The notes beneath the pieces were generated by a model. The model had not been told where the DNA came from and searched no databases. It was given only the letters and a program-made list of their open reading frames with translations. A DNA stretch of 64,000 nt, from positions 62,001 through 126,000 of IMG/VR virus record IMGVR_UViG_3300008110_000030; one strand, 5' to 3'. How positions within the stretch are numbered: the stretch's first letter is position 1; each line of letters opens with the position of its first letter. The position numbers and the translations under genes are program-made. Shown in pieces: positions 45,406 to 60,866 of this stretch.

Positions 45406-45443
45406 AAAGGCAGCTTGACAGTTGCCTTTCTTTGTTATATAAT
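45406..45443 (+). terminator. terminator-like hairpin fused to a consensus sigma70 promoter
   Basis: AAAGGCAGC-TTGACA-GTTGCCTTT followed by CTTT; TTGACA (45415-45420), 17 bp, TATAAT (45438-45443). Confidence 0.8.
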
Positions 45444-45449
45444 AGTGTT

Positions 45450-46292: not shown

Positions 46293-46300
46293 ATATTAAT

Positions 46301-46813
46301 ATGGTAAAACTTGTATTTCATCCAGATCCAATATTAGAAGAACAAATGCCAGCATTTGATTTTGATAATCCTATTATGGATCCAAAAGAATTAGAAAAAG
46401 AATTACTAGCAATTATGTTTGCCAATAATGGAATTGGACTTGCGAGTCCACAAATTGGCATTAAAACTAGAGTATTTGCAATGGGACATTCACTCATGCC
46501 TGAAGCAAGTCTTGCTATGTTTAATCCAACAGTAATTGACGCTAGTAACGAATTTCAAGATATAGAAGAAGGCTGTTTAAGTTTTCCAAATATTTTTGCT
46601 AAAATTAAAAGACCTACTTGGATTGTTGTAAAATACAATACTAGTGATAATGAAGAACGAACTGAACGAATGGAAGGTTACAACTGTAAATGTTTTTTAC
46701 ATGAATTGGACCACTTAGATGGTATCGTAATGAAAGATCGTTTAAGTCAACTTAAATGGGCGTTAGCCGTTAAAAAATCAAAAAAGGTAAAAAATTATGC
46801 TAGAACCAAATGA
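46301..46813 (+). CDS. def: peptide deformylase
   Basis: GIGLASPQ, EGCLS, HELDH. Confidence 0.95.
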   Translation: MVKLVFHPDPILEEQMPAFDFDNPIMDPKELEKELLAIMFANNGIGLASPQIGIKTRVFAMGHSLMPEASLAMFNPTVIDASNEFQDIEEGCLSFPNIFAKIKRPTWIVVKYNTSDNEERTERMEGYNCKCFLHELDHLDGIVMKDRLSQLKWALAVKKSKKVKNYARTK

Positions 46814-49079
46814 AGATCTAGAAAAGATCTTTGAACGTGCAATTCAGTTATCGTTAGATAACCATCATCAATATATCACGCTAGAACATTTCTTATATTG
46901 CATGGTCACTGACGAAACATTCAATAGCGTACTTATGGGCTACGGCACAGATGTTCAAGACTTGACTACAAAGTTAGAAAACTATATTAAAAACGAGCTT
47001 GTTAGTATCGTTGACCAAACATCAAATTCCAGACCAAAAAAGACTAATAGTGTTGAACGTATGCTTAACAGAGCATTTACTCACACATTGTTTTCTGGAA
47101 GAACAACTATTGAACCAATCGATTGTTTTTTAAGCATTTTAAACGAAAAGAAAAGTCATGCGGCATTTTATCTTCGTAGTGCTAATATTGAAAAAGACAA
47201 ATTTATTGAATACGTTAATAAAGAAATTGGCCCTAGTAGTCAAGACGGAGAAGAAAACACTGTGCCAGAAAATAAACTTGAAGCATATATTGGCAACTTC
47301 TGTACGAATTTAAATGCTAAAGTTAAGAATAAAGAAATTGATCCTGTAATTGGCAGAGATAAAGAACTAGAAGAAATGCAATTAGTTCTTGCACGTAGAC
47401 ACAAGTCAAACGTTATGCTAATTGGTGATCCAGGGGTTGGTAAAACAGCTCTTGCTGAAGGACTTGCACGTAAGATTGTTGAAGGCAATGTTCCTAAGTT
47501 TATTCAAGACCACACAGTCTATACTTTAGACATTGGTGCTTTGTTAGCTGGTTCTAAATATCGTGGAGATTTTGAAGAACGTCTTAAAAATGTTCTTACA
47601 GCTATCCAAAAAAAGAAAAAGTGCATTTTGTTTATTGACGAAGCACACATGATGAACGGTGCAGGAACAAGCAGTGGTCAGAGCAATGATATGGCTAATA
47701 TGCTAAAGCCTGCACTTGCTAAAGGTGGGTTAAAAGTCATTGCATCAACTACGTGGGAAGAATTCCGCAAGCACTTTGAAAAGGATCGTGCCTTAATGCG
47801 CAGGTTCCAACGTGTTATGGTTGGCGAGCCTGACGAAGTAACTACTATTAAGATTATTAAAGGTCTTAAAAAGTATTACGAAAAGCATCATGGATGCAAA
47901 ATTACTAATCAAGCAATTATTGATTCTGTAAAATATAGTGTCAAGTATATGAGTGATAAAAAATTGCCTGATAAAGCAATTGATATCATTGACTGTGCCT
48001 GTGCTCGCTTTAAGGTGCGTGATGAAGAAGGTGGTACAGTAGATCACGATGAAGTTGTATTTGAAGTTGCCAAGATGACTGGATTGCCTTTAGAACAAGT
48101 AGCCGCTAAAGACACAACTACGTTACATGATTTAGAAGGTGACATTAAATCTGAAGTATATGGTCAGGATACTGCTGTAGACTCATTGCTTGATAAAATT
48201 TATATAGCACAGGCTGGACTTAAGAGTCATAATAAGCCAATTGGTAGTTTCTTGTTTGTTGGTCCAACTGGTTGTGGCAAAACTGAAACTGCTAAAGTAC
48301 TTGCAAATAAAATGGGCATTAAGATGCTACGTTTTGATATGAGTGAGTTCCAAGAGAAACACTCAGTTGCTAAATTTATTGGTGCCCCTCCAGGATATGT
48401 TGGCTTTGAAGACAATGCTGGGCAACTAATAACTCAGCTTCAAGAAAATCCAAACTGTATATTGTTGCTGGATGAAATTGAAAAAGCGCATCCAGACGTT
48501 AGTAATGTGATGTTGCAACTTATGGACAACGGTTTTGTTACTGGTAGCAATGGTAAGAAAGCAGATGCACGTAATGTTATTATCATTATGACTTCTAACT
48601 TAGGCGCTTCTGATAGTGAGAAATCTAATATTGGTTTTGGCAGTCAAGAAAAACTTGGCGAAATCAACAATGCTGTTAATAGATTCTTTGCTCCTGAGTT
48701 CCGCAATCGTTTAGATGGAATTATTACGTTTAAGAAACTTGAACACAGTGTAATGACAAAAGTTGTTGACAAGTTTATTAAAGAAATGAATTCGTTAATT
48801 ACTGATAAGAATGTGTTTGTACAGTTAACTGAAACTGCTAAAAATCATCTTATTGACAAAGGGTTTGATAGCAAGATGGGTGCTAGACCAATGCAACGTG
48901 TAATTGATGAAGGCATTAAGAAGCCTTTAAGCAGACAAATACTGTTTGGTAAACTAGTAAACGGTGGTTTAGTTAAAGTAGACTTTGTTAATGATCAGCT
49001 AGTATTTGATTACTTTGACCCATTACCAATCGTAAAAGATACTGAGCCAAGTATAGAAGAAAATGCAACACAAGATTAA
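46797..49079 (+). CDS. clpA: ClpA-type Hsp100 unfoldase
   Basis: Two AAA+ modules (GDPGVGKT, GPTGCGKT), RFDMSEF, IGF loop, PEFRNRLD, MGARP; 760 aa with no M-domain. Confidence 0.93.
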   Translation: MLEPNEDLEKIFERAIQLSLDNHHQYITLEHFLYCMVTDETFNSVLMGYGTDVQDLTTKLENYIKNELVSIVDQTSNSRPKKTNSVERMLNRAFTHTLFSGRTTIEPIDCFLSILNEKKSHAAFYLRSANIEKDKFIEYVNKEIGPSSQDGEENTVPENKLEAYIGNFCTNLNAKVKNKEIDPVIGRDKELEEMQLVLARRHKSNVMLIGDPGVGKTALAEGLARKIVEGNVPKFIQDHTVYTLDIGALLAGSKYRGDFEERLKNVLTAIQKKKKCILFIDEAHMMNGAGTSSGQSNDMANMLKPALAKGGLKVIASTTWEEFRKHFEKDRALMRRFQRVMVGEPDEVTTIKIIKGLKKYYEKHHGCKITNQAIIDSVKYSVKYMSDKKLPDKAIDIIDCACARFKVRDEEGGTVDHDEVVFEVAKMTGLPLEQVAAKDTTTLHDLEGDIKSEVYGQDTAVDSLLDKIYIAQAGLKSHNKPIGSFLFVGPTGCGKTETAKVLANKMGIKMLRFDMSEFQEKHSVAKFIGAPPGYVGFEDNAGQLITQLQENPNCILLLDEIEKAHPDVSNVMLQLMDNGFVTGSNGKKADARNVIIIMTSNLGASDSEKSNIGFGSQEKLGEINNAVNRFFAPEFRNRLDGIITFKKLEHSVMTKVVDKFIKEMNSLITDKNVFVQLTETAKNHLIDKGFDSKMGARPMQRVIDEGIKKPLSRQILFGKLVNGGLVKVDFVNDQLVFDYFDPLPIVKDTEPSIEENATQD

Positions 49080-50201: not shown

Positions 50202-50284
50202 TATTGGTACTAGCTCAATTCAAATAAATACATGATAGTTAAAATCATGGTACCTTTACCATGGGTGAGTAAGGCACATATATC

Positions 50285-50653
50285 ATGAAATTATTTGAAT
50301 TTTTTAGTCAGAATACAACTGAACCAGAAGAGAAAGAAAATGACGACCAAATACGTAAGGACGTCATGGCCTTTATACTCGATGATAATGACATCTATCG
50401 AGAGAAACTTCTCCCACTGATCCACAAGCACAATAAGAACGTTAAAGATGAAGATTTACGTAAAGATTACGTAAAAGTTATCAACGACTGTTGCATCGAA
50501 TTTTATAAAGAAAAAGAATTAAAAACAGATCCAAACAAACTTTTTCCAAAAGCAATGAGAAATGAGATGATAAAACAACTCATTAAGATCAATAAAGAAA
50601 ATATTACTACAAAGAAGAATAAAAAAGATGAAGATACGAGATCTGTTATTTGA
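50285..50653 (+). CDS. hypothetical protein with MKLFEFF leader
   Basis: First gene of the leader-tagged array; TAAATA at 50225. Confidence 0.65.
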   Translation: MKLFEFFSQNTTEPEEKENDDQIRKDVMAFILDDNDIYREKLLPLIHKHNKNVKDEDLRKDYVKVINDCCIEFYKEKELKTDPNKLFPKAMRNEMIKQLIKINKENITTKKNKKDEDTRSVI

Positions 50654-51014
50654 AGGTAGGATTGATCCTACTCTTTTAAATCATTTTCTTAAACACTGTT
50701 CTGAAGAATTGGGTCTTGAATCGTTACCTAAAATTAATCTCATAGATAACAAAGAATATTCAGTAACACACAAATCATTTGGCGGTTATCAGCCAGGCGA
50801 AAAATCAATAATTTTATCCACTAAGGATAGACACCCAGTTGATGTGTTTAGAACACTAGCACATGAACTAACTCACTATAAACAAGATTTAGACGGACAA
50901 CTTGAAGGGGACGATGTTGGTGCCACAGGTAGTCCAGAAGAAAATGAAGCTAATTCTGTTGCAGGCGTAATAATGCGTAACTTTGGTCAGAAGTTTCCAG
51001 AAGTATTTGAATAA
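50628..51014 (+). CDS. zincin-like metallopeptidase domain with MKIRDLLFE leader
   Basis: RTLAHELTH (HExxH) and downstream ENEAN. Confidence 0.7.
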   Translation: MKIRDLLFEGRIDPTLLNHFLKHCSEELGLESLPKINLIDNKEYSVTHKSFGGYQPGEKSIILSTKDRHPVDVFRTLAHELTHYKQDLDGQLEGDDVGATGSPEENEANSVAGVIMRNFGQKFPEVFE

Positions 51015-51022
51015 GGACCATC

Positions 51023-52036
51023 ATGCGTATTAAAGATCTATTTGAAGGCGGGTGGGATACTACCAAAACACAAAACACTGTACTACATCCTAAAATTGTA
51101 AGTGTTGCCTTATCTGTAGTAGATCGATTTGTTGTTGATTTCAATAACTTTATTAAAAATAAAAACGTTGGTCAAATTAAACGTGGAAGACCAACAGGTA
51201 GCAGTGCATACCATGAACAAGACGCCATTGAAAGACCAGATACAATTTATGGCGATATTGATTTACAAATGATTGCACCGCCAGTTGAAGGATTAACTTA
51301 CGGACAGTTTAGTGGTTATTGGAATAAACTAGCAGATGATTTTGTTAAGACTGCAAATCCTGCGTATGTAGACACAACTGAAAGCAAACCTGGTCATCCA
51401 ATTTTCCAAGTTGGTAAACAAGACTATGTTCAAATTGACTTTATGTGGCATGAGCAAAAAATGGCGGATTGGGGTGCTACTCGTGTAACTCCAGAACGTG
51501 GTATCAAAGGTTTACTGTCAGGTAACATGTACAGTGTATTTGGTGAAATACTTGACATGAGTATTCAACATGCTGGAGTACAACTTAAAGTAATTGATGA
51601 CCAACGTGTGCCGTTTAGTAAACAAAAAGATACACAAATAATCACAGTGACAACAAATCCAAAAACATTTATATTAGATGTGTTTATGTATTTGGCCAAA
51701 CGTATGGGCGTGAACAATCCAAGAATTGATCCCATGCTCAAACAGTTCTCTGGCAACGACATTAACGATGTTAAAATAAGCAAACTAGTTAATGGTATGA
51801 AGGGATTTGCCTCAAGTGCAGAAGCAAGTGGTATGTTTGGTAAAGGTGATTTACAAAATTTTAACTCTGCACAAGATTTTATGAATAAGTTTTGGCAACG
51901 TTACGAAGAAAAAGCACAAATTGACATTGCTGGTAAAAAGCGTGACAAAGCACAAACCCCAGATGCTATTGCACGTGCCAATGCAGACAGAGAAAAGATC
52001 CAAAAAGGTCTAGATATGGTTAAAGGATATTTCTAA
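51023..52036 (+). CDS. Pol-beta-superfamily nucleotidyltransferase with MRIKDLFE leader
   Basis: PTGSS...YGDIDL and third acidic residue in VQIDF. Confidence 0.65.
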   Translation: MRIKDLFEGGWDTTKTQNTVLHPKIVSVALSVVDRFVVDFNNFIKNKNVGQIKRGRPTGSSAYHEQDAIERPDTIYGDIDLQMIAPPVEGLTYGQFSGYWNKLADDFVKTANPAYVDTTESKPGHPIFQVGKQDYVQIDFMWHEQKMADWGATRVTPERGIKGLLSGNMYSVFGEILDMSIQHAGVQLKVIDDQRVPFSKQKDTQIITVTTNPKTFILDVFMYLAKRMGVNNPRIDPMLKQFSGNDINDVKISKLVNGMKGFASSAEASGMFGKGDLQNFNSAQDFMNKFWQRYEEKAQIDIAGKKRDKAQTPDAIARANADREKIQKGLDMVKGYF

Positions 52037-52413
52037 TGAGAGCAAAAGAATTTATAACTGAAATTAAGGCAGGAGCAATATCTAAACGACAAGGCATGTC
52101 AACTACTGGTATAAATTTATATACTGATGCTGAAAGACGAAACAGCGACTATGTGTCATATCGTTTAGGTATGGCAGTTGCTTGTACAGATGGTACAAAC
52201 GATCCTGATATGGATGCTAAAAGTTGGGTTGACAAAAGTAAGACTACTCACCCATATACACCCCAAGAACAAGAAATGCTTAAAAAAGCCTACAAGGCAG
52301 TAGGAGCAAAATGGAAAGATTTAAATCACGGAGATTTAACTAGTCAAGAATTAAAAACAACCAACGTTGTTAGTCCAGTTGCAAAACCTAAACGAAACAA
52401 ATACGGCGTGTAA
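52036..52413 (+). CDS. hypothetical protein with MRAKEFITE leader
   Basis: TAATG coupling; YRLGMAVA, SPVAKPKRNKYGV. Confidence 0.7.
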   Translation: MRAKEFITEIKAGAISKRQGMSTTGINLYTDAERRNSDYVSYRLGMAVACTDGTNDPDMDAKSWVDKSKTTHPYTPQEQEMLKKAYKAVGAKWKDLNHGDLTSQELKTTNVVSPVAKPKRNKYGV

Positions 52414-52425
52414 TGAGAGTTAAAA

Positions 52426-53265
52426 ATGAAAATATTTGAACTGTTAATTGAAAGTGGTAAAAGGCTTGCTAGTCAAGGAGTTGAAGTCTCTAGAGTAAAC
52501 AAAGACGACTTTGTTGCCGCTAAAAATGTTTTAAATCCTATTCTAATCAAAGCAGGAATTAAAGCAGGATGGACTGCTGGCGGTGCTGGTAGTTTTGATC
52601 CTGAACACGACTATGGTGGTGGTGGAAGAGAAGACAGCGGTGATATTGACATTATGATTGACCCTGCAGAACTAGTAGGACGTTTTCCACCCAATGTTGA
52701 AGCATACAATGCCGCAAGTGCAAAACCAATCGGTCCAAAAGCTATGGCCAACGCTATGGCAGATCCAGCTAAAAAAGCCAAGATAGAAATGAGTGCTAGT
52801 AAATGGGCACTGGCTGACTTTATGACAAAAAATGGTTTTAGAACCGACCCAGGAACGCTAACTGTTGAATATACCGCTAGTGGGAAAAGTTTTTCAGTTG
52901 ACTTGATTATACGTCCAAGAAATGCTTGGCCACTACATACTCATGATTTTGCAACTGATCCAAAAATGCGTGGTGGAGATTTATGGATTAACATGTATCC
53001 TGTGTTAGCTAAACTTGCTAGTAAGACAGTTTTTACTGATCCAAAAACTGGTGAAGAAAAAGGCAATATACAATTTAGTCCTGATAAAGGCTTAGTGGAC
53101 AGAGATACTAATAAAGTAATTGCCATTGATAAAAATGACATTGCCAAAATTTTATTAGGTCCACAATTTAGTGCAAAGGATTTGTCAAGTATGACAGGTA
53201 TTAGAAATGCGTTATCTAAACAACCTGAAAAGTTGTCAAAACTACCACAGCCACAAGAGCAATAA
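52426..53265 (+). CDS. Pol-beta-superfamily nucleotidyltransferase with MKIFELLIE leader
   Basis: GGAGS...DSGDIDI and third acidic residue in FSVDL. Confidence 0.65.
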   Translation: MKIFELLIESGKRLASQGVEVSRVNKDDFVAAKNVLNPILIKAGIKAGWTAGGAGSFDPEHDYGGGGREDSGDIDIMIDPAELVGRFPPNVEAYNAASAKPIGPKAMANAMADPAKKAKIEMSASKWALADFMTKNGFRTDPGTLTVEYTASGKSFSVDLIIRPRNAWPLHTHDFATDPKMRGGDLWINMYPVLAKLASKTVFTDPKTGEEKGNIQFSPDKGLVDRDTNKVIAIDKNDIAKILLGPQFSAKDLSSMTGIRNALSKQPEKLSKLPQPQEQ

Positions 53266-53273
53266 ATACAGTT

Positions 53274-55682
53274 ATGAATTTATTTGAACTTTTTTCACCC
53301 ACTAAACAAGCTATTATGGAAGGCATTGACCATCCAGAAGATCTCATTATCTCACAAGGTAGTGCAGGTGCTGACAGGGTATTAAAAGATTTAGCAAGTT
53401 TGGAAAAAGATCCAAACACAGTTACAGTCAAGTGGGACGGATTCCCAGCAGTTGTGTTTGGTAGAGACAAGGGCGGAAACTTAGTGTTTATGGATAAACA
53501 CATGTACGAAAAAGTAGCCTCTGGAAAAATGGACTTTATGTCTATTAAAGATTATGACGAAAGTCGTGGTGCTAATCGTACAAGTTTGATTGATCAAGAA
53601 AGTATTATACGTCCGCTATTAAGTAAAATAGTTCCTAACGTCAAAGATCAATATTGGATGGGTGACTTGATGTGGACTGGTACGCCGCCAGTTAGTAATG
53701 GCGCATTTGTGTTTAAACCAAACACTGTAGAATATCAAGTTGATATAGATCAAACTCCAGGCGTTGGAGATTCATTAAGCGATAACATTGCCAGAAGTGG
53801 GGCAGGAATTGCAGTGCATACTTTTATTCCTGGTTTAGGTCAGCCTGATCAACCACTTGTTGGACTTAAAGGTTTGCCAGAAGATGCTGGTATTACTTTC
53901 CTAGTTGGAGAGATGAAGGACAAGCCACGTGTTGCAATTAATCCTGAACTATTAAATCAAACACAACAAATAATTAATTCTAATAGAAGTGCTGTAGACA
54001 AGTTTTTTGTTGACTTAACTGCAATGAAGGGCAAGAGCGTTATAACTGCTATGGGTCCGTTCATTACACGTATGTTAGAAGACAATGACATCAAAGGTGA
54101 CATTGTTCCTAGATTCTTAGAGTTTTTAGGCGAACGTTTAACTGACAGTGCTAAACAAAAAATGTTAGGCACAAATAAAGATGGTTGGCTTTACCAAGAA
54201 CAGGGCGGTGCTCCTGGACTACTTGGCATTTGGACTATGTGGGCCGCAATTACTGAATTAAAATTAAACGTTAAACAACAAATTGACACACAACAGCAAG
54301 GTAGTAAAATACGTGCTGTTACTGATGGTATCAATGCACATGAAGGTTACGTGTTTGGTGCAGGTAAAGACAAATTAAAACTAGTTGATCGATTAGGATT
54401 CAGCAGAGCAAACTTTGCTAAACACAAAGTTAGTGATGAAGAAGTAGCTGAAAAAAGTAAAATGCCGCTAGCTGTTTTTTGCTTTGGTCGTATGAACCCG
54501 CCAACAATGGGACACGGACTTGTTTTAAATAAAACAGTTGAACTTGGCAAACAAAATGCATTTGTATTTTTAAGCAATAGTGTTGACCCAACAGATAATC
54601 CACTATCGCCAGCAATAAAAGCAAAATTTATTGAACAAATTTATCCTACTACTAAAGGTCATATTGTTACAGATTTTGTACAAAGTCCAATATATGCTGC
54701 CAACTGGCTGTATAGTAAAGGTTATCGTAACATGGCATTTGTTGCTGGTAGTGACCGACTAGGAAAAGAAAAAGGTAGTATTGAAAAACTACTTAGTAGT
54801 TGGAACAGTGGACCAGTTAGAAGTACTGATCCAGCTGGCGCTAGAGACTTTGTAAATATGCAGTACATAAGTGCAGGAGATAGAGATCCTGACGGTGAAG
54901 GAGTTACTGGCTACAGTGGAACTAAAGCTCGTCAAGCAGTGACTGCGAACAATGAACAACAGTTTCAAAATTATACTGGAATTGGTAGCGACATTGTGGT
55001 TAACGGAAAAACGTTATACCAGTCAGTCAAAGAAGGTATGGGCATAAGAGACCAGGCACTAGCGCAACCTGCTGTTGTTAAACAACCTGCAACGCCAAAT
55101 GTACAAGTAACTAAAAAGATTCCAGGAAAAGCACCAGCACAGGAGTTGGACACAATGAATGAAACTACCTTAAAAAATAAGGAAGATTTACAAGCAAAAC
55201 GTAAAGCATTACAAGATATTCAGATGGATAAACATACACATAAGGATCCACAATTGAGTGCTGAATTAGCTAGACGCAAAGCATCTTTAGAGCGTGAAGC
55301 AAAGAAAAAAGGTATTGCTGAATCAATTGTTGAGTCAATTGGTATTTTAGAAGAACAACAAAATTTCTTAAGAAGACAAAAGTTAAATGAGGCACCAATT
55401 GAAATGGATCCACAAAATCCAAATGATCCAATGGTTATGCCTCCTGGACTTAATCCAGGTAAATTAAGTTATCGAAAACAACGAGCTGCCGCACAATTAG
55501 CAGATTTAGCTCGTATGGCTTCGCAGGCAAATGAAAAGAATAGTGCTATAATGTGGGATAGTATTGTTAGACATTTTCCAGAATTGGAAACAAACATTCG
55601 TAGCATACAACATGGTATGCAAGAATTAGAAAAAGTGCGTCGTGCAGGCGGCAAACGAAGCAAGGGAATTGAAAAAATATGA
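53274..55682 (+). CDS. fusion of an RNA-ligase-like (KxDG) domain and a HIGH-superfamily nucleotidyltransferase, with charged C-terminal modules
   Basis: VKWDG, MGDL, HEGYV, KLVDR; then FGRMNPPTMGH, NPLS, VAGSDR, YSGTKAR; MNLFELF leader; TAAATA at 53263. Confidence 0.7.
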   Translation: MNLFELFSPTKQAIMEGIDHPEDLIISQGSAGADRVLKDLASLEKDPNTVTVKWDGFPAVVFGRDKGGNLVFMDKHMYEKVASGKMDFMSIKDYDESRGANRTSLIDQESIIRPLLSKIVPNVKDQYWMGDLMWTGTPPVSNGAFVFKPNTVEYQVDIDQTPGVGDSLSDNIARSGAGIAVHTFIPGLGQPDQPLVGLKGLPEDAGITFLVGEMKDKPRVAINPELLNQTQQIINSNRSAVDKFFVDLTAMKGKSVITAMGPFITRMLEDNDIKGDIVPRFLEFLGERLTDSAKQKMLGTNKDGWLYQEQGGAPGLLGIWTMWAAITELKLNVKQQIDTQQQGSKIRAVTDGINAHEGYVFGAGKDKLKLVDRLGFSRANFAKHKVSDEEVAEKSKMPLAVFCFGRMNPPTMGHGLVLNKTVELGKQNAFVFLSNSVDPTDNPLSPAIKAKFIEQIYPTTKGHIVTDFVQSPIYAANWLYSKGYRNMAFVAGSDRLGKEKGSIEKLLSSWNSGPVRSTDPAGARDFVNMQYISAGDRDPDGEGVTGYSGTKARQAVTANNEQQFQNYTGIGSDIVVNGKTLYQSVKEGMGIRDQALAQPAVVKQPATPNVQVTKKIPGKAPAQELDTMNETTLKNKEDLQAKRKALQDIQMDKHTHKDPQLSAELARRKASLEREAKKKGIAESIVESIGILEEQQNFLRRQKLNEAPIEMDPQNPNDPMVMPPGLNPGKLSYRKQRAAAQLADLARMASQANEKNSAIMWDSIVRHFPELETNIRSIQHGMQELEKVRRAGGKRSKGIEKI

Positions 55683-56740
55683 AAATTACACAACTTTTAG
55701 ACGAAGCAAAAAAAGGTGTTAAGGCACCTAAGCATACTGTCAAACCTAGAAACTTTGTAGCTAAAAACGCTATAGCCACTACTAGTGGTGCTGGCGCACA
55801 CAAGGATAAAAAGAAAGCCGCTAAACAAGGCGATGTTAAGCACAAAGGCAAAGAGCTTGCTGAAGATACTCGTGCCGAGTTAGCTTTTAAAGATTTAGAT
55901 GCAGAAATATCAGGCGACAGTACCAATGTATCTGATCTAGAACAACGAGCATCAGCATTAAGAAAACAAATGCCTGTGCAAAAACCAACTCGAGTAGCTG
56001 ACTTACCAGATGTTGATCAATACGAAAATGCAAAAAGATTTGGAAAATTTAATGGATCATACGGGGATTGGTTAAAAAATAAAGGCATGAAAGAAAATAC
56101 ATTGCAAGGTGTGGAGGAAGAAAAACAAAAAGGTGTTGATGGCAAGGCCTGTTGGAAAGGCTACAAGCGCATGGGCACCAAGAAGAAAGGTGGCAAGACA
56201 GTAGACAACTGTGTGCCTATGAATGAGAGTTTTGATCCCGAGTATGATGACGAAGCTGGTATGGCAGACAATAACCTTGAAACTTTAAAAAGAGCAGTAG
56301 AAGGTTTAGACGACATGATTAACGAAGGCGACAACTTGCCTGAATGGTGTCAAGAAAAAATTGCAGTAGCAAAAAGCATGTTAATCTCAGTTTGGGACTA
56401 TATGCAAAGTGAAGAAAATAGTATGTCTGAAAATCAAAGAAATCCTGATCTAATGAGTCAAACTGATTATGATCGATATCAACAAGGTCAAATGGACCAA
56501 CAAAAGCGTGACTTTAAACGTGACGAACTAGAACATGAACTTGGCCATGAAGAGCAAGGCATGTACTATGTTGTAATTGCAAAGAATGGCAAATGGGAAC
56601 ACACTAAAGCGCAGCCTAGACAAGAAGGAATGAATGCCGCACAAAGAATTATTAATGCGTTACATTCAAAATATCCTAGTATGCACTTGGGCATGGTTGG
56701 TCCAGACGGCAAAGTATATAATTATGGTAAGGGCAAATAA
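55679..56740 (+). CDS. modular charged protein with MKITQLLDE leader (probable internal head protein)
   Basis: Short unrelated modules separated by hydrophobic-x-E motifs. Confidence 0.65.
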   Translation: MKITQLLDEAKKGVKAPKHTVKPRNFVAKNAIATTSGAGAHKDKKKAAKQGDVKHKGKELAEDTRAELAFKDLDAEISGDSTNVSDLEQRASALRKQMPVQKPTRVADLPDVDQYENAKRFGKFNGSYGDWLKNKGMKENTLQGVEEEKQKGVDGKACWKGYKRMGTKKKGGKTVDNCVPMNESFDPEYDDEAGMADNNLETLKRAVEGLDDMINEGDNLPEWCQEKIAVAKSMLISVWDYMQSEENSMSENQRNPDLMSQTDYDRYQQGQMDQQKRDFKRDELEHELGHEEQGMYYVVIAKNGKWEHTKAQPRQEGMNAAQRIINALHSKYPSMHLGMVGPDGKVYNYGKGK

Positions 56741-56742
56741 AA

Positions 56743-57177
56743 ATGGATAAGCTACAACTAGCATTAAAAACAGCATTTGCAAGTGAATATTCATTTGCCT
56801 TAAAAGCACAAAATTTCCATTGGAATGTAGAGGGCATGTTCTTTACACAGTTTCATGATTTGTTTGGTGACATTTATACTGAAGTTTATGGAAACATTGA
56901 TGCGTTTGCAGAAAATATTAGAAAAGCAAGAGCATACACCCCAGCAAGTTTAACACGCTTTAGTATGTTAAGTGTTATTCAAGATGAAACAGAAATATTA
57001 GAAGCACCAGAGATGTGTGCAGAACTTTTATCAGATTCTGATAAGATGGCTGAAATTCATAGATTAACTTTCCAGTTGTCTGAAGAAGCAGGTGAACACG
57101 GTCTTAGTGATTTTTTAGCTGGAAGACAAGATGCCTTCCGCAAACACTCTTGGATGTTAAGAGCCACATTGAAATGA
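56743..57177 (+). CDS. dps: Dps / ferritin-like DNA-protection protein
   Basis: AQNFHWNVEG..F..FH.LF...Y, D..AE.IR, KHSWML. Confidence 0.9.
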   Translation: MDKLQLALKTAFASEYSFALKAQNFHWNVEGMFFTQFHDLFGDIYTEVYGNIDAFAENIRKARAYTPASLTRFSMLSVIQDETEILEAPEMCAELLSDSDKMAEIHRLTFQLSEEAGEHGLSDFLAGRQDAFRKHSWMLRATLK

Positions 57178-57224
57178 AGATCAAAGAATTATTAGAACAT
57201 AAACAAACGCATGAAACAATATAG
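57174..57224 (+). other. orphan 16-codon ORF consisting of the array leader (MKIKELLEHKQTHETI)
   Basis: ATGA overlap with the dps stop; matches the leader consensus. Confidence 0.5.
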
Positions 57225-57504
57225 AATTACTACTGATAATATTGTTAATGACAGTCCTGATGATTGTTATTTAGATCCTACTGACCCTTTGAATGAGATA
57301 AAGGCTCTACAATATCTTGGTGGTATCAATTCGTTAAATAGACTACAAGAGTACAAAGGTATGCAAGGTAGTAATATTAGTGCAACTGGCTCAGAGAAGG
57401 GAAGGCTACAGCGAGAAAACAATATTAAACCAGGAACTCCTGAATGGTTTAAATTGTGGTTTAGTTTACCGTATATGACTGGCGAGAGGCCTATTGAAAA
57501 ATGA
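57211..57504 (+). CDS. hypothetical protein
   Basis: IKPGTPEWFKLWF motif; ATGA overlap with the next gene. Confidence 0.65.
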   Translation: MKQYRITTDNIVNDSPDDCYLDPTDPLNEIKALQYLGGINSLNRLQEYKGMQGSNISATGSEKGRLQRENNIKPGTPEWFKLWFSLPYMTGERPIEK

Positions 57505-58655
57505 AAATAAGAGATTTATTAGAGTTATCAAAATCTAGTCCACTAGGCAAATTCATTGATAAAGTAGATACAGATTATTCTGTAGGGGCAACCACAGATA
57601 AGATTGGCAATGCAATTTCTAACGTTTTTAAAAATTATTCTAATGATAAAACAGATGCACCTACTAAAAGTGAAGTTCCTGTAACAGTAGCAAAACCTGC
57701 ATCAAGTTCAACTGCTGTAAGTTCTGAAGTTGTTGCTCAAGAATTAGATAGACAAGGAATCACTGACCCAAATTTAAGAAAATCAATTATGGGGAAATTT
57801 GGTCAAGAATCAGGCGGAAACACTAGAGTCACTGAAATTCCTTATAAGAATACAAGTAATGATATTATTAGATTAAGATTACCGCAACTTAGAAGTATGA
57901 GTGATAATGAATTAAATGATTTAAAACAAGATACAGAAAAATTTTTTAATAGGGCGTATGGATATAAAGGTAATTCGTTAAACAATACCGAACCAGGTGA
58001 TGGTTACAAATACAGGGGCCGTGGTCTAACTGGTATCACTGGTAAAGTAAATTACCAAAGAGCTGATGATGCATTAGGTTTAAAAGGCGAGCTAGTTAAA
58101 AATCCTGATCTACTATTAGATCCAGAAATTGATAAAAGAGCTTCTGTTTGGTTTTATAAGGCAGCTGGCGCGGATAAAGTAACTTTTGCCAATCAAGAAG
58201 ATGCTAATAAGTGGGCTATACACAAGGCTGGTGGGAACATGTATGCTCCTGGCACTGAGTTAGGAAATATCGCATTAAATGATTTGAATAAAAGAACGGC
58301 CGTAATTGGTGCGGTAGCTGCCACTGGGATTGTGGCAGGTCCAACTTTAGTAAGAAAAGCAGACACTGTAATAGATAGGGTTAAAAATCTCTTAGGCAAA
58401 ACAGCCGACAGTGCTAAATCAGTTGTAGGACAAACAGTAAACACTGCCAGAAATACTGCTATAGCAACTGCATTGGGTTCAGGATCTAGCAGTGGAAGTG
58501 GTGGAGGCTTTTATGGCGGAAGTGGATCAGCTCCAGAAGAACAAGAAGTGACATTAATAATTAATGGCAAACGTAAAAAATTTAAAAATAAAAGAGAAGC
58601 AAAAATTGCAATGGACATTGCAAGATCACAAGGGATAGATGCAAGATATGGGTAA
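57501..58655 (+). CDS. second GH19/lysozyme-like protein with MKIRDLLE leader (probable virion-associated muramidase)
   Basis: GQESGG, GDGYKYRGRGLTGITGKVNY, NPDLL. Confidence 0.75.
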   Translation: MKIRDLLELSKSSPLGKFIDKVDTDYSVGATTDKIGNAISNVFKNYSNDKTDAPTKSEVPVTVAKPASSSTAVSSEVVAQELDRQGITDPNLRKSIMGKFGQESGGNTRVTEIPYKNTSNDIIRLRLPQLRSMSDNELNDLKQDTEKFFNRAYGYKGNSLNNTEPGDGYKYRGRGLTGITGKVNYQRADDALGLKGELVKNPDLLLDPEIDKRASVWFYKAAGADKVTFANQEDANKWAIHKAGGNMYAPGTELGNIALNDLNKRTAVIGAVAATGIVAGPTLVRKADTVIDRVKNLLGKTADSAKSVVGQTVNTARNTAIATALGSGSSSGSGGGFYGGSGSAPEEQEVTLIINGKRKKFKNKREAKIAMDIARSQGIDARYG

Positions 58656-59256
58656 GCCAGAAGTTTATTTAGATATGGACGGAGTTATTGCAGACTTTTT
58701 TACAGAGTATGCTAAACTTGCGGGCATTGAATCAGGGAACTACAGAGATATTCCACCAGCAAAAACAGATCCTACATTAAACAAAATGATAGGTACAGAC
58801 TTCTTTGCACGTCTACCAAAATGCAGAAATGCAGATGCACTAGTAGACTTAATAGTAAAAACATTTGGTACTTATAATATTTGTTCAAGTCCTCTGCGTG
58901 GTGATCATGCAAACAGTGAAAAACAAAAAAAGATTTGGCTTGGCAACAATCTAAAATACCAACCTAAAGATGTTGTAATTACACCAAACAAAGCCAAATG
59001 GGCCAAACAAACAGATGGAACTCCTAACATTTTAATTGATGATAGAGGAAGTAACATTAGTTCATGGGAAGCCGCTGGTGGTATTGGTATCAAATATCAA
59101 GCAGACGAAGACAACTTACAAGTAATTGTACAAGGTATTAAAAGAGCATTTTCTGTTATAAAAGGTGAAGAGAAACACGACCCTCAAAAGTTAAAAAGTT
59201 TAGATCGTAGTAATGGTAATTTAATTGCTACTAGTGGTGATAAAGACGCCCATTAA
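58639..59256 (+). CDS. HAD-superfamily 5'(3')-deoxyribonucleotidase-like phosphatase
   Basis: YLDMDGVIADF, CSSP, K..W, ILIDD, W.AAGG.GI. Confidence 0.85.
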   Translation: MQDMGKPEVYLDMDGVIADFFTEYAKLAGIESGNYRDIPPAKTDPTLNKMIGTDFFARLPKCRNADALVDLIVKTFGTYNICSSPLRGDHANSEKQKKIWLGNNLKYQPKDVVITPNKAKWAKQTDGTPNILIDDRGSNISSWEAAGGIGIKYQADEDNLQVIVQGIKRAFSVIKGEEKHDPQKLKSLDRSNGNLIATSGDKDAH

Positions 59257-59265
59257 GGACATCAT

Positions 59266-59502
59266 ATGAAAATTCAAGAAATTATCACAGAAACTGCTAC
59301 AGCTGGATCAACAAGTGCTAGTAATATTGCTAGTACTGGAAACAGTCCACACGTTGCAGTTGGAAGCCCTGCAGTGATTAAACGATGGGGCGGAAGTCCT
59401 GGTAAAATGGGTAAAAGTCCAGAACCAGCTAAAACTAAGTCTCAAGACGCCGATGATAACCCTGTCACTAACCCAAGTGTCGGTAATAACCTAGTTGCAT
59501 AA
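59266..59502 (+). CDS. small protein with MKIQEIITE leader
   Basis: AAGGA RBS; ETATAGSTSASNIAS. Confidence 0.7.
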   Translation: MKIQEIITETATAGSTSASNIASTGNSPHVAVGSPAVIKRWGGSPGKMGKSPEPAKTKSQDADDNPVTNPSVGNNLVA

Positions 59503-59522
59503 ATATAGTATTGGAGAACAAA

Positions 59523-60866
59523 ATGCCTTTTAAATCAGCTAAACAGAAAAAAACAATAGATGCGGCAGCACATAATCCTGCTTTTGCAAAAAAAGTAGGA
59601 ATTAAGACCGGTGATGCCAAAAAAATGTCTGCACATGGTAAGGGTCAAACTAAGTTTGAAGAAGCCAAAGATACTGTAGAAAAAGATGAAAAAGGCAACG
59701 TTAAATCATGGAAGCACGAAGGCGACTGGAAAAAAGCTGATAACAAACAAGGACGTGGAAAAGTGACTAATTTAAGCGACAAGGCTCGTAGACAAACAGC
59801 AAAGATGAGCAAGGCTGAAACTGAAATGGCTGAAGCATTTGAACAAGCATTAGAAGGTGCTGGATCTCCAACAGTTACGCATGGTCCAAACAAAGGCAAA
59901 AAATGGAGTCCAGAAACTCCAGGGCCAACAAACCCAAGTTATAAAAGTATAGACAAAGGCATCCCTAGTCCACCAGATGGTGCAACTGCTCCTCCTCCTG
60001 GTTACAAGCCTCCAAAGCCTAGCAAACGTGCAGAAGTTACACCTACAAGTGACAGTGACGACACAGCCATGACCGCAGAAAGTTCTTCTAAGAAAGTAAT
60101 GAAGAAGTTACGTGCTAAACACATGATGGAGTCAATTAAAGTGTTAGGAGAATTAATTGCAGAAGCTAAAAAATCTGCAAAAAAGAAAAGTACTAAAGTA
60201 AAAGAAGATCCTAACGAAGGTAATGCATTTGGTAAAGCAGTGCAAGATGCTAAAAAAGACGGCATACAAAAAGGTGAAAAAGTCAAAGTTGGTGGTAAAG
60301 AATATCCAGTAAAAGAAGCTGCCAATGAAAAATGCAATCATACACCAAAAGGTAAAAAGTGCCCAGTACACGGTTTGAAAGAGTGTGGTTCAATGTATGA
60401 AGGCAATGACGGTAACTTGGCCAATAATGCCAAACCATATGACAAAGTCACACGTGGTGATGTTATTGCTGGTCGTTTGGGCAAAGACGAAATGGGCGGT
60501 AAGAAAAAGAAAGATAAAAAGACTACTGAAACATTTATGCCTGTAAACAAGGAAAAGCCACAAGGACCAGTTGATAAGGCAATTGGTAATGTGACCAAGG
60601 CAGTTGGTGGTGCAATTAAAACTGTTGCAGACAAAGTAAAAGGTGCAACTGGAGACACTGACGTAAAAACAGACGAGTCATATACTGTCAATGGTAAGAA
60701 AGTGTCCAAAGCTGCCTATGATAAAGAAATGAAAAAAGCTGGCAAAGGTAAAGAAAAAGTTAAAGAAGGTTGGACACACGATACACTAGCCGCAAGATTA
60801 TTTGAAAGTGGTGACGAGTATATGGTTTCATTACATAACAGATTAAGCCAAAAAATAAAAGGTTAA
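59523..60866 (+). CDS. highly charged modular protein (probable internal head/core protein)
   Basis: TAAATA at 59500, GGAG RBS, ATG at 59523; many hydrophobic-x-E-(G/A/S) motifs. Confidence 0.65.
   Translation: MPFKSAKQKKTIDAAAHNPAFAKKVGIKTGDAKKMSAHGKGQTKFEEAKDTVEKDEKGNVKSWKHEGDWKKADNKQGRGKVTNLSDKARRQTAKMSKAETEMAEAFEQALEGAGSPTVTHGPNKGKKWSPETPGPTNPSYKSIDKGIPSPPDGATAPPPGYKPPKPSKRAEVTPTSDSDDTAMTAESSSKKVMKKLRAKHMMESIKVLGELIAEAKKSAKKKSTKVKEDPNEGNAFGKAVQDAKKDGIQKGEKVKVGGKEYPVKEAANEKCNHTPKGKKCPVHGLKECGSMYEGNDGNLANNAKPYDKVTRGDVIAGRLGKDEMGGKKKKDKKTTETFMPVNKEKPQGPVDKAIGNVTKAVGGAIKTVADKVKGATGDTDVKTDESYTVNGKKVSKAAYDKEMKKAGKGKEKVKEGWTHDTLAARLFESGDEYMVSLHNRLSQKIKG

What the first reader, a model, noticed from the sequence alone, without database searches (positions are those of the whole stretch)
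51023..55682. Four nucleotide-transfer active sites in three closely clustered tagged genes
Seen: 51023 and 52426 each have the GS...DxD...D signature of Pol-beta-like nucleotidyltransferases but are very divergent from each other. 53274 has covalent-NTase/RNA-ligase-like motifs (KWDG, GDL, EGYV, KLV) fused to a HIGH-type domain (NPPTMGH, GSDR, SGTKAR). Known: these folds cover RNA ligation and tRNA repair, CCA/poly-N addition, protein AMPylation, cyclic oligonucleotide synthesis and NMN/phosphopantetheine adenylylation. Inference: a pre-formed nucleotide-modifying module delivered at infection. It might repair tRNAs cut by anticodon nucleases, rebuild NAD+ against NAD-depleting defences, or nucleotidylate host proteins. 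The substrate cannot be read from the sequence.
Basis: partly seen in the sequence, partly recalled or inferred. Interest (0 to 1): 0.8.

Follow-up and report, generated by a model that had tools for sequence, protein, structure and literature searches.

The report
Leader-tagged ligase and nucleotidyltransferase module, T4-like phage
A freshwater T4-like phage carries three neighbouring genes for four nucleotide-transferring enzyme domains that travel together, and are often fused, across many uncultured phages. They bear head-targeting-like leaders, so they are probably injected with the DNA as a ready-made kit that extends and reseals broken nucleic acid ends.

Summary

- **52426** models confidently (pLDDT 84.6). 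Its best 50 solved-structure matches are all family-X polymerases.
- **51023** is a second Pol-beta-type family, known only from metagenomes and supported indirectly.
- **53274, N-terminal half** is Pfam DUF6267. It has KxDG, D, EG and K motifs conserved in 93-94 of 94 sequences, in ligase order. It gives weak but consistent fold matches to RNA and DNA ligases, with Trl1/Rnl1-type first.
- **53274, C-terminal half** is a HIGH-type cytidylyltransferase-like domain.

New evidence: the four domains are fused in many combinations in other phages, and are syntenic in 33 of 80 viral contigs. All nine tagged ORFs lie within 50285-59502. The tag resembles the leader of T4 Alt. In fused homologs an [LI]-x-E site precedes each domain examined.

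Best reading: a co-functioning module that extends 3' ends and ligates breaks, probably packaged in the head and ejected. The substrate is unresolved; RNA is somewhat more likely than DNA. The role of the HIGH domain is unknown. The literature searches run here found no description of it.

The parts
51023..52036 (+). 337-aa Pol-beta-type nucleotidyltransferase (family 'A3'). The leader is MRIKDLFE followed by GGW. Active-site candidates are G59-S60 (51197-51202), D78-x-D80 (51254-51262) and D139 (51437-51439).
   Evidence: ORF. Motifs invariant in 19 homologs. 707 metagenome homologs, on contigs up to 354 kb. No Pfam, PHROG, NCBIfam, PADLOC or PDB sequence hit. Models of Atlas neighbours align to family-X polymerases at TM 0.40-0.52. 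Fused after DUF6267 in P0339, P0366 and P0367.
52036..52413 (+). 125-aa tagged protein of unknown function, lying between the two Pol-beta-type genes. The leader is MRAKEFITE.
   Evidence: ORF and tag. No family hit. In the closest contigs, a gap of matching size lies between the A3 and A1 genes in L010, and there is none in L005.
52426..53265 (+). 279-aa PolX-like minimal nucleotidyltransferase (family 'A1'). The leader is MKIFELLIE followed by SGKRL. Active-site candidates are G55-S56 (52588-52593), D73-x-D75 (52642-52650) and D159 (52900-52902). H171/H173/D174 are also invariant.
   Evidence: Alignment A1. AF2 model with pLDDT 84.6 and pTM 0.79. In Foldseek against PDB the top 50 are all family-X polymerases, with prob about 1, E 6e-3, TMq 0.42 and about 254 aligned columns. 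No Pfam match in any of 26 members. Fused or adjacent to DUF6267 in 33 of 80 IMG/VR loci.
53274..53321 (+). N-terminal leader of the 802-aa protein, MNLFELFSPTKQAIME, ending in I-M-E just before the folded domain.
   Evidence: pLDDT is below 50 for residues 1-15. An [LI]-x-E lies within 16-18 aa upstream of the HPED core in 47/61 N-terminal and 29/33 internal DUF6267 domains, against 12% background. The same holds for 48/56 unfused genes in IMG/VR loci.
53322..54428 (+). DUF6267 domain, read here as a divergent ligase-type (covalent) nucleotidyltransferase. It has K53-x-D-G (53430-53441), D131, F147/Y154, H182, a helical insert at residues 224-341, E357-G358 (54342-54347) and K369 (54378-54380).
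   Evidence: Pfam PF19782, E 6.6e-29. AF2 pLDDT 91.8. Conservation 93-94 of 94. Foldseek PDB matches are weak, but nearly all that are not helical bundles are ligases: Trl1 adenylyltransferase, a Rhizobium phage ligase, Lig1, the ASFV ligase and archaeal RNA ligases. In BFVD, many matches beyond the family itself are RNA or DNA ligases. The only hhalign segment against T4 RnlA pairs HEGYV with IEGYV, and is not significant. RNA_lig_T4_1 is the only extra Pfam family hit by more than one member, at E 0.15.
54453..55058 (+). HIGH-type (cytidylyltransferase-like) nucleotidyltransferase domain, with NPPTMGH (54495-54515), GSDR and SGTKAR.
   Evidence: PHROG cytidyltransferase families at 3e-37 and 1.5e-22. 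Pfam CTP_transf_like is weak here (E 0.034) but passes in homologs. Invariant motifs in alignment A4. Atlas neighbours are all viral CTP_transf_like clusters. No NCBIfam (NadR/NadM etc.) hit.
55059..55682 (+). Low-complexity linker, with four [LI]-x-E sites at residues 681-706. It is followed by a conserved C-terminal module of about 100 aa.
   Evidence: The module recurs after HIGH domains in P0242, P0268, P0271, P0275, P0279 and P0281, and stands alone as P0274.
50285..59502 (+). Cluster holding all nine leader-tagged ORFs of the window. Their starts are 50285, 50628, 51023, 52036, 52426, 53274, 55679, 57501 and 59266.
   Evidence: Regex scan of all + strand ORFs. Among them are a zincin-like peptidase (50628) and a GH19/endolysin-like protein (57501).
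50224..50230 (+). ATAAATA motif, resembling a T4-type late-promoter core, 55 nt before the first tagged ORF.
   Evidence: There are 9 matches in the window, all on the + strand and each shortly upstream of the start of a listed ORF. 26.8 are expected over both strands. The others precede ORFs with tail-fibre or virion-protein hits, among other genes.

Best explanation
The three genes encode one co-functioning enzyme set. It comprises two unrelated-in-sequence Pol-beta/PolX-like nucleotidyltransferases (51023 and 52426). The third gene (53274) is a bifunctional protein that joins a divergent ligase-type covalent nucleotidyltransferase (DUF6267, closest to Rnl1/Trl1 RNA ligases) to a HIGH-type nucleotidyltransferase.

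Each carries a short N-terminal leader like the capsid-targeting propeptides of T4 internal proteins and Alt. The inferred route is as follows. The proteins are made late and taken into the prohead. They are trimmed after [LI]-x-E by the prohead protease and ejected with the DNA. They therefore act before any phage gene is expressed.

The inferred chemistry has two steps. The Pol-beta-type enzymes add one or a few nucleotides to the 3'-OH of a broken strand. The ligase domain is adenylylated on K53 and seals the break.

The most likely substrate is RNA, meaning tRNA cut by host nucleases. This would parallel the known pairing of RNA ligases with RlaP nucleotidyltransferases. Repair of nicks or gaps in the incoming DNA is the close second. 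The role of the HIGH domain is not known; supplying or re-forming a nucleotide cofactor is a guess.

Shown here: the ORFs, conservation of the motifs, the PolX-like fold of 52426, and the linkage of the domains by fusion and synteny. Inferred: ligase activity, packaging and cleavage, and the substrate.

My rough sub-confidences are: functional coupling 0.85, DUF6267 as a ligase-type enzyme 0.75, virion delivery 0.6, RNA as substrate 0.4.
For: Coupling:
- HMMs of the four domains were run on 150 representatives. They found A2-A4 fusions (36) and A1-A2 fusions (11). They also found A1-A2-A4 (P0248, with a full-length A1, and P0246), A2-A3-A1 (P0366, P0367), A2-A3 (P0339) and A4-A1-A2 (P0289).
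- In 80 IMG/VR loci with DUF6267, 33 have an A1 domain fused in front or encoded just upstream. The order is A1 (A3) A2 (A4) in all but the closest relative, L010.
- A 354-kb contig has A1-like, A3 and DUF6267 as consecutive genes.

Ligase type:
- The KxDG Lys, the acidic, aromatic, EG and K motifs are conserved in 93-94 of 94 sequences.
- They lie on successive strands of a model with pLDDT 91.8.
- Ligase matches appear in two Foldseek libraries.

PolX-like fold of 52426.

Precedent: RNA ligases associate with Pol-beta NTases (RlaP) that add 1-2 nucleotides to damaged RNA 3' ends (PMC7824862; bioRxiv 10.64898/2025.12.29.696909).

Delivery:
- The T4-like setting includes rIIA, a clamp loader and tail fibres.
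- The T4 Alt leader MELITELFDE, read from the T4 genome, resembles the tags.
- T4 gp21 cuts after L/I-x-E, and a 10-residue leader suffices for head targeting (PMC9026906).
- Leaderless homologs start exactly after the tag's Glu.
- [LI]-x-E sits at the junctions of fused homologs.
- The tag occurs only in one cluster, which also holds a peptidase and a lysozyme-like protein.
- A late-promoter-like motif precedes the cluster.
- Homologs are fused to ART-PolyVal and Acb1 domains. ART domains are the commonest protein-modifying enzymes of injected polyvalent proteins (PMC5512222; PMC9503650).

End-healing partners in the wider network:
- An Acb1-like domain, which I take to be a 2H phosphoesterase (P0258).
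- An NT5C-like HAD domain (P0246, and the window gene 58639-59256).
- An AAA_33 kinase together with HIGH and NTP_transf_2 domains.
Against: - No polynucleotide kinase or 2H phosphoesterase was found in the window cluster. No tRNA genes are in the window. Classic healing-and-sealing of 5'-OH/2',3'-cyclic-P breaks is therefore not complete here.
- The Foldseek ligase matches are weak: E 0.16-2, prob at most 0.47, TM at most 0.22. No sequence profile links DUF6267 to ligases.
- The helical domain lies between motifs IIIa and IV, unlike any ligase I know of.
- The fold of 52426 matches DNA polymerases of family X, which points to DNA as much as RNA.
- In cyanophage P-HM2 the DUF6267 and HIGH genes have no leader. 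They sit among replication genes (gp41, mazG, gp61), so the enzymes can work inside the cell without packaging.
- The [LI]-x-E upstream of DUF6267 could be part of the domain rather than a cleavage site.
- Fusions in polyvalent-type proteins may reflect co-delivery rather than a shared pathway.
- The 51023 protein was not modelled.
Confidence: 0.45

Rival explanations
1. It is a DNA break-repair kit. The PolX-like enzymes fill gaps, and DUF6267 seals nicks in the incoming or replicating phage genome. This would resemble the Pol X plus ligase repair pairs of large eukaryotic viruses. The NT5C-like HAD protein would act as a 3'-phosphatase.
For: The top 50 PDB matches of 52426 are all family-X DNA polymerases. 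Atlas neighbours include PolX-ligase fusions of Nucleocytoviricota. DNA ligases are among the fold matches of DUF6267. In P-HM2 the DUF6267 gene lies between gp41 and gp61. T4-like cyanophages have no recognised gp30 ligase (PMC1079782). Synechococcus is not among the ten commonest names in the gp30 tblastn, although at least 366 Synechococcus phage records are in the collection.
Against: The model has no OB domain; it has a helical domain instead, as in RNA ligases. RNA ligases outnumber DNA ligases among the BFVD matches. The 279-aa protein is too short to hold the 8-kDa and helix-hairpin-helix DNA-binding domains of family X, and no member hits a family-X Pfam model. By tblastn, DUF6267 is found in only 40 cultured phage records, so it is not a universal replicative ligase.
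Confidence: 0.22
2. It is a nucleotide or NAD+ metabolism and signalling module. The HIGH domain would be an NMN adenylyltransferase that rebuilds NAD+ against NADase defences. The Pol-beta-type enzymes would make or cap small nucleotides rather than repair polymers.
For: The HIGH superfamily includes the phage NadM/NadR adenylyltransferases (PMC9503650). Homologs are fused to an NAD+-using ART domain (P0327) and to an anti-CBASS Acb1 domain (P0258). One Atlas cluster joins HIGH domains to a P-loop kinase; I note that NadR also pairs a HIGH domain with a kinase.
Against: No NCBIfam NadR/NadM/NadD model matches. No NadV-like partner was seen in the ORFs scanned. No PADLOC CD-NTase similarity was found. 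This reading gives no role for a ligase-type domain with an invariant KxDG.
Confidence: 0.1
3. They are host-takeover enzymes that nucleotidylate host proteins, as proposed for Pol-beta NTases of polyvalent proteins.
For: Iyer et al. class the Pol-beta NTases of injected polyvalent proteins with protein-modifying domains (PMC5512222). The cluster is leader-tagged like T4 Alt, a protein-modifying enzyme.
Against: The fold of 52426 matches polymerases that extend nucleic acid 3' ends, and no protein-modifying enzyme is among its top 50 matches. The tight linkage with a ligase-type domain is not explained.
Confidence: 0.08
4. The enzymes are not packaged. The conserved N-terminal motif would serve something else, such as translation initiation or assembly of a cytoplasmic complex, and the module would act late inside the cell.
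For: Cyanophage homologs lack the leader and lie among replication genes. No virion proteome is available. The [LI]-x-E motif is short.
Against: The upstream DNA of the tagged genes is not conserved, so the signal is at protein level. The leader is dispensable in homologs and ends where they begin. It resembles the leader of T4 Alt. The cluster holds a lysozyme-like protein and a peptidase, domain types that Iyer et al. list in injected polyvalent proteins.
Confidence: 0.25

Closest known systems
[quoted passage not shown]
   Same: A ligase-type enzyme is genetically tied to a Pol-beta-superfamily nucleotidyltransferase. RlaP adds 1-2 nucleotides to damaged RNA 3' ends before ligation.
   Different: Neither Pol-beta-type protein matches PF10127 or any Pfam model. 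Their fold is closest to family X polymerases. The ligase partner is DUF6267, not Rnl1, Rnl2 or RtcB. A HIGH-type domain is fused on. No kinase or phosphatase of the Pnkp type is in the cluster. The proteins carry head-targeting-like leaders.
T4 internal proteins and Alt (capsid-targeting sequence, gp21 processing)
   Same: A short N-terminal leader ends in [LI]-x-E. The phage background is T4-like. The leader sits on unrelated proteins clustered together. Alt is an enzyme injected with the DNA.
   Different: The cargo here is nucleotidyltransferases and a ligase-like enzyme. Packaging and cleavage are not demonstrated.
Polyvalent proteins of phages and conjugative elements (Iyer et al. 2017)
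   Same: The same kinds of domains occur: Pol-beta NTase, zincin peptidase, lysozyme and ART. Homologs of these very domains are fused into long multidomain proteins with ART-PolyVal, ParB_N and Acb1.
   Different: In this window the domains are mostly separate genes, each with its own leader. None of the terms searched in that paper turned up DUF6267 or HIGH-type domains.
Fungal/plant tRNA ligase Trl1 and T4 Rnl1 (PF09511)
   Same: This is the best fold match of the DUF6267 model (9qw7, 6n67, 9r3w). The EGYV...K-x-K stretch looks like T4 Rnl1 motifs IV-V. A helical domain is present rather than an OB fold.
   Different: Similarity is below significance. The helical domain is inserted before motif IV instead of following motif V. 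There is an extra invariant HPED motif at the N-terminus.
Cyanophage gene pair 'hypothetical protein | cytitidyltransferase' (T4-like gene clusters 71 and 190)
   Same: They are true homologs of the two halves of the 802-aa protein, and are adjacent in P-HM2, S-CAM9 and others. A 591-aa S-PM2 protein named as cytidyltransferase-like matches the DUF6267 model over its length, so S-PM2 probably carries the fusion.
   Different: They have no leader and lie in the replication gene region. No Pol-beta-type partners were detected in cultured phages.

Membership tests
Covalent nucleotidyltransferases (ATP/NAD+ ligases, capping enzymes), for DUF6267 | Motif I KxDG with the nucleotidylated lysine | tested here: met
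   K53, D55 and G56 are present in 94/94 domain sequences.
Covalent nucleotidyltransferases, for DUF6267 | Motifs III, IIIa, IV (EG) and V (K) in that order on beta strands | tested here: met
   D131 lies on strand 126-135, F147/Y154 on strands 144-157, E357-G358 at strand 358-361, and K369 on strand 368-371. Whether they line one pocket could not be checked, because no coordinates were available.
Covalent nucleotidyltransferases, for DUF6267 | Fold similarity to solved ligases | tested here: inconclusive
   Among PDB matches, nearly all that are not helical bundles are ligases, but with E 0.16-2, prob at most 0.47 and TM at most 0.22. BFVD RNA ligases reach prob up to 0.69.
Covalent nucleotidyltransferases, for DUF6267 | Formation of a covalent enzyme-NMP intermediate | not testable with these tools
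   Needs [alpha-32P]NTP or NAD+ labelling of wild type and K53A.
DNA ligases and capping enzymes | OB-fold domain after motif V | tested here: not met
   After K369 the model has only two helices. The extra domain is all-helical, at residues 224-341.
Rnl1/Trl1 RNA ligases (PF09511) | Match to the family profile | tested here: not met
   Only 2 of 39 members match, at E 0.15. hhalign against T4 RnlA gives prob 0.3.
Pol-beta-like nucleotidyltransferase superfamily, for 52426 | G[SG] loop, DxD, and a third acidic residue on the palm sheet | tested here: met
   All are invariant in 26 sequences. They lie in the model around strands 48-51, 73-78 and 154-162. The fold matches Pol beta/mu/lambda/TdT with prob about 1.
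Pol-beta-like nucleotidyltransferase superfamily, for 51023 | The same motifs and fold | tested here: inconclusive
   The motifs are invariant, but only among homologs of at least 67% identity. The fold is inferred only from Atlas neighbours, at TM 0.40-0.52 to PolX. No model was made.
Family X DNA polymerases | Match to the family profiles (palm, thumb, fingers and 8-kDa domain models) | tested here: not met
   No Pfam PolX model matches any member. The 279-aa protein is also too short to hold the fingers and 8-kDa domains.
RlaP (PF10127) | Match to PF10127 | tested here: not met
   No hit for either protein or any alignment member.
RlaP (PF10127) | Gene linkage with an RNA ligase | tested here: inconclusive
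   Linkage with the ligase-like DUF6267 is strong, but DUF6267 is not a proven RNA ligase.
HIGH / cytidylyltransferase-like nucleotidyltransferases (PF01467) | (H/T)xGH and SxxxxR-type motifs, and a profile match | tested here: met
   TxGH and the S..R motif are invariant. PHROG cytidyltransferase families match at 3e-37. Pfam is below its cutoff here (14.8 against 21 bits) but above it in homologs P0369, P0258 and P0332.
NMN adenylyltransferases (NadR/NadM/NadD) | Match to curated family models | tested here: not met
   No NCBIfam hit at E up to 0.01.
T4-type capsid-targeted internal proteins | N-terminal leader of about 10 residues ending in L/I-x-E, in a T4-like phage | tested here: met
   Tags. 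T4-like genes in the window. The T4 Alt leader. The rule for cleavage and targeting.
T4-type capsid-targeted internal proteins | Presence in the virion and removal of the leader | not testable with these tools
   Needs virion proteomics. No cultured host or phage is known for this sequence.
CD-NTases (CBASS-type cyclases) and other defence NTases | Match to PADLOC models | tested here: not met
   No hit for any of the three proteins.

The most novel reading that the evidence does not exclude
Aquatic T4-like phages inject a pre-made repair system for broken RNA. It comprises a new ligase family (DUF6267, with its helical domain inserted inside the nucleotidyltransferase fold), two new PolX-like 3'-end extenders, and a fused HIGH-type enzyme. 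This would let them undo tRNA or mRNA cleavage by host defences before any phage protein can be translated. In some phages the same enzymes would be made as polyproteins that the prohead protease cuts apart at [LI]-x-E junctions.
Probability: 0.25. Interest if true: 0.85.

Novelty: new variant of a known kind. Interest (0 to 1): 0.66.

Why it matters
Defences that cut tRNA or otherwise stop translation also stop the phage from making its counter-measures. Enzymes delivered ready-made with the DNA would escape that trap. No injected repair enzymes came up in the literature searched here.

The work also gives a testable activity to DUF6267, a Pfam family of unknown function. The search found 3254 cluster representatives matching the 802-aa protein, which carry this domain, the HIGH domain or both. 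It defines two unclassified Pol-beta-fold families, links them by fusion to a HIGH-type enzyme long annotated only as 'cytidyltransferase' in marine cyanophages, and points to a leader that could predict head-packaged cargo in uncultured T4-like phages.

Tried and rejected
- **DUF6267 as a third Pol-beta-fold paralog.** The Atlas showed a TM of 0.72 between neighbours of 51023/52426 and a 990-aa 'DUF6267 protein'. I rejected this idea. That architecture (P0367, 990 aa) carries A3 and A1 domains next to DUF6267. My DUF6267 model does not match Pol-beta folds.
- **Sequence links among the three families.** hhalign found none.
- **PDB sequence searches.** Single proteins and the profiles A2 and A4 gave nothing useful.
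- **DNA and protein searches of cultured phages.** The region has no DNA match. The two Pol-beta-type proteins have no tblastn match.
- **A second HIGH-type gene at 59511-60866.** This was suggested by a PHROG hit. I rejected it: the protein is a Lys-rich, low-complexity sequence and does not match the A4 profile.
- **DUF6267 as the missing replicative DNA ligase of cyanophages.** I kept this only as part of the DNA rival, since tblastn finds DUF6267 in only 40 cultured records.
- **Literature.** Searches for DUF6267 and 'cytitidyltransferase' found no paper. Burroughs and Aravind 2016, on RNA repair systems, is not held.
- **tRNA genes.** None are in the window.
- **TATAAATA.** It is absent from the window; the shorter ATAAATA is the informative motif.

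Full report
**Setting**

The window is phage DNA with nearly all genes on the + strand and about 37% G+C. It encodes rIIA, a gp44-like clamp loader, an endonuclease and very large tail-fibre-like proteins, so it is a T4-like myovirus. Lake and other freshwater metagenome runs hold 30-97% of the sampled words of the stretch. Contigs from three DNA runs cover most of it without insertions or deletions, and one contig spans the junction between the two halves of the 802-aa gene. The closest viral contig (96% identity) is 245 kb long. More distant relatives lie on contigs of 320-372 kb.

- *51023 (337 aa):* G59-S60, D78-x-D80 and D139 are invariant in homologs.
- *52426 (279 aa):* G55-S56, D73-x-D75 and D159 are invariant down to 28% identity.
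- The two proteins share no detectable sequence similarity with each other or with DUF6267.
- *802-aa protein, N-terminal half:* this is Pfam DUF6267 (E 6.6e-29). These are conserved in 93-94 of 94 domain sequences drawn from 50%-identity clusters.
- *802-aa protein, C-terminal half:* this matches phage 'cytidyltransferase' families (3e-37). It has invariant NPPTxGH, GSDR and S..R motifs.

**Folds**

The AF2 model of 52426 has pLDDT 84.6 and pTM 0.79. Its 50 best PDB matches are all family-X polymerases (Pol beta, mu, lambda, TdT), with probability near 1 but modest TM (0.42). I read it as a minimal PolX-like enzyme. No Pfam model, including RlaP PF10127 and NTP_transf_2, matches any member of either Pol-beta-type family.

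The DUF6267 model is very confident (pLDDT 91.8). Its matches to solved structures are weak (E 0.16-2). Apart from helical-bundle proteins that match the helical insert, nearly all are ligases. They are the Trl1 tRNA-ligase adenylyltransferase domain, a Rhizobium phage ligase, human Lig1, the ASFV ligase and archaeal RNA ligases. In the viral library, many matches beyond the family itself are RNA ligases, with a few DNA ligases.

The conserved residues fall on successive strands in the order I, III, IIIa, IV, V. A helical domain (residues 224-341) lies between IIIa and IV, and there is no OB fold. The only segment hhalign finds against T4 RnlA pairs HEGYV with IEGYV; it is not significant, but I believe that stretch is motif IV of T4 RnlA. 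I therefore take DUF6267 to be a divergent ligase-type nucleotidyltransferase, at about 0.75 confidence.

An early idea was that DUF6267 is a third Pol-beta paralog. It came from an Atlas match to a 990-aa 'DUF6267 protein'. It fell when proteins of that size proved to be fusions of DUF6267 with the other two families.

**The domains belong together**

I built profiles of the four domains: A1 = 52426, A2 = DUF6267, A3 = 51023, A4 = HIGH. I ran them on the 150 best representatives found with the 802-aa protein. Many fusions appeared:

- A2-A4 in 36 proteins and A1-A2 in 11.
- A1-A2-A4 in P0248 (with a full-length A1) and P0246.
- A2-A3-A1 in P0366 and P0367, A2-A3 in P0339, and A4-A1-A2 in P0289.

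Among 80 IMG/VR loci with DUF6267, 33 have an A1 domain fused in front or encoded immediately upstream. The gene order is A1, (A3), A2, (A4) in all but L010, the 96%-identical relative, where A3 precedes A1 as in the window. A 354-kb contig has A1-like, A3 and DUF6267 as consecutive genes.

Cultured marine T4-like phages (cyanophages, Pelagibacter phage HTVC008M, Methylophilales phage Melnitz) carry DUF6267. Cyanophages carry the HIGH gene next to it. The two Pol-beta-type families have no match in cultured phages.

**The tag**

Nine ORFs start with M-[KRN]-[ILA]-x-[DEQ]-[LFI]-[LFI]. Most have a Glu two residues after a Leu or Ile within the first 8-16 residues. All nine lie between 50285 and 59502. 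The DNA upstream of them is not conserved, so the signal is in the protein.

T4 Alt is an enzyme packed in the head and injected. It begins MELITELFDE in the T4 genome record. Published work shows that about ten N-terminal residues target T4 internal proteins into the prohead, and that the gp21 protease cuts after L/I-x-E.

Four further observations fit a removable leader:

- Divergent homologs of 52426 that lack the tag begin exactly where the tag ends.
- The first 15 residues of the DUF6267 model are disordered.
- In the fused homologs examined, each domain is preceded by [LI]-x-E. Examples are ...LISE|GIEHPED...IVE|GGW and ...LNE|GGN.
- This holds for 29 of 33 internal DUF6267 domains, against a 12% background.

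The cluster also encodes a zincin-like peptidase and a GH19/endolysin-like protein, both tagged.

The motif ATAAATA occurs nine times in the window. Every copy is on the coding strand, shortly upstream of the start of a listed ORF. About 27 are expected on both strands. It precedes ORFs with tail-fibre or virion-protein hits and the first tagged ORF.

Homologs of these domains are also fused to ART-PolyVal plus a sigma-70 region 4, to ParB_N plus Acb1, and to NT5C. Domains of these kinds are described in injected 'polyvalent proteins'.

Against delivery, the cyanophage P-HM2 versions have no leader and lie between gp41 and gp61. No virion data exist. I put delivery at about 0.6.

**Function**

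Pairing of a ligase with a Pol-beta-superfamily nucleotidyltransferase is a known theme of RNA repair. RlaP enzymes sit next to RNA ligases, occur in T4 (NrdC.11), and add one or two nucleotides to damaged RNA 3' ends so that repaired tRNA works again.

The present module has the same logic with different parts. The wider fusion network contains possible end-healing enzymes:

- an Acb1-like domain, which I take to be a 2H phosphoesterase (P0258);
- NT5C-like HAD domains (P0246, and the window gene 58639-59256);
- an AAA_33 kinase.

Pre-made repair enzymes would make sense against defences that block translation.

The PolX-like fold, the replication-gene context in cyanophages, and the lack of a recognised gp30 ligase there keep DNA nick or gap repair alive as the main rival. 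The window cluster has no kinase, no 2H enzyme and no tRNA genes.

The HIGH domain cannot be assigned. It matches no NadR/NadM/NadD model, and all its Atlas neighbours are viral cytidylyltransferase-like clusters. No similarity to CD-NTases or other defence nucleotidyltransferases was found.

**Verdict**

The new points are:

- the fusion and synteny evidence that the four domains work together;
- the assignment of DUF6267 to the ligase type;
- two unclassified PolX-like families;
- processing-site-like junctions that tie leader-tagged single genes to polyprotein versions.

Substrate and delivery remain to be shown at the bench.

Noticed in passing
window 10562, 14609, 17332, 26954, 34607, 50224, 53262, 59499, 61572 (7-nt motif starts): ATAAATA occurs 9 times, always on the + strand and shortly upstream of the start of a listed ORF; about 27 are expected over both strands. 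TATAAATA occurs 0 times against 6.6 expected. This looks like the late-promoter core of this phage, and the motif is avoided elsewhere.
   Followed up: partly
window 50628-51014: Tagged 128-aa protein with a HELTH zincin motif. It gives weak hits to DUF6782, phage metallo-protease phrog_87 and CapP. It is a possible processing peptidase, like those described in polyvalent proteins.
   Followed up: partly
window 57501-58655: Tagged 384-aa protein with a GH19/endolysin-like domain (phrog_181, 9e-28). If the tag means packaging, this is a lysozyme-like enzyme carried in the head rather than the baseplate.
   Followed up: no
window 56743-57177 and 58639-59256: An untagged Dps/ferritin-like protein and an untagged NT5C-like HAD phosphatase sit inside the tagged cluster. 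One homolog (P0246) has an NT5C domain fused to A1-DUF6267-HIGH.
   Followed up: partly
window 45432-49079: DnaJ, peptide deformylase and a full-length ClpA homolog lie just upstream of the tagged cluster. This is an unusual set of protein-folding and turnover genes for a phage.
   Followed up: no
window 55314-55682 (residues 681-802 of the 802-aa protein): Four [LI]-x-E sites within 26 residues precede a conserved C-terminal module of about 100 aa. That module recurs after HIGH domains in other phages and stands alone as a 99-aa protein (P0274). This may be C-terminal processing, as in T4 Alt.
   Followed up: partly
window 59523-60866: Lys-rich, low-complexity protein of about 447 aa, preceded by ATAAATA. 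Its PHROG 'cytidyltransferase' hit is probably spurious.
   Followed up: yes
window 50231-50284: An inverted repeat (CCATGGTA...TACCATGG) lies between the ATAAATA at 50224 and the first tagged ORF.
   Followed up: no
P0327, P0258, P0330 (homologs from the representative search): DUF6267 or HIGH domains are fused to ART-PolyVal plus sigma-70 region 4, to ParB_N plus anti-CBASS Acb1, and to NTP_transf_2 plus Amidoligase_2. These are polyvalent-protein-like architectures.
   Followed up: partly
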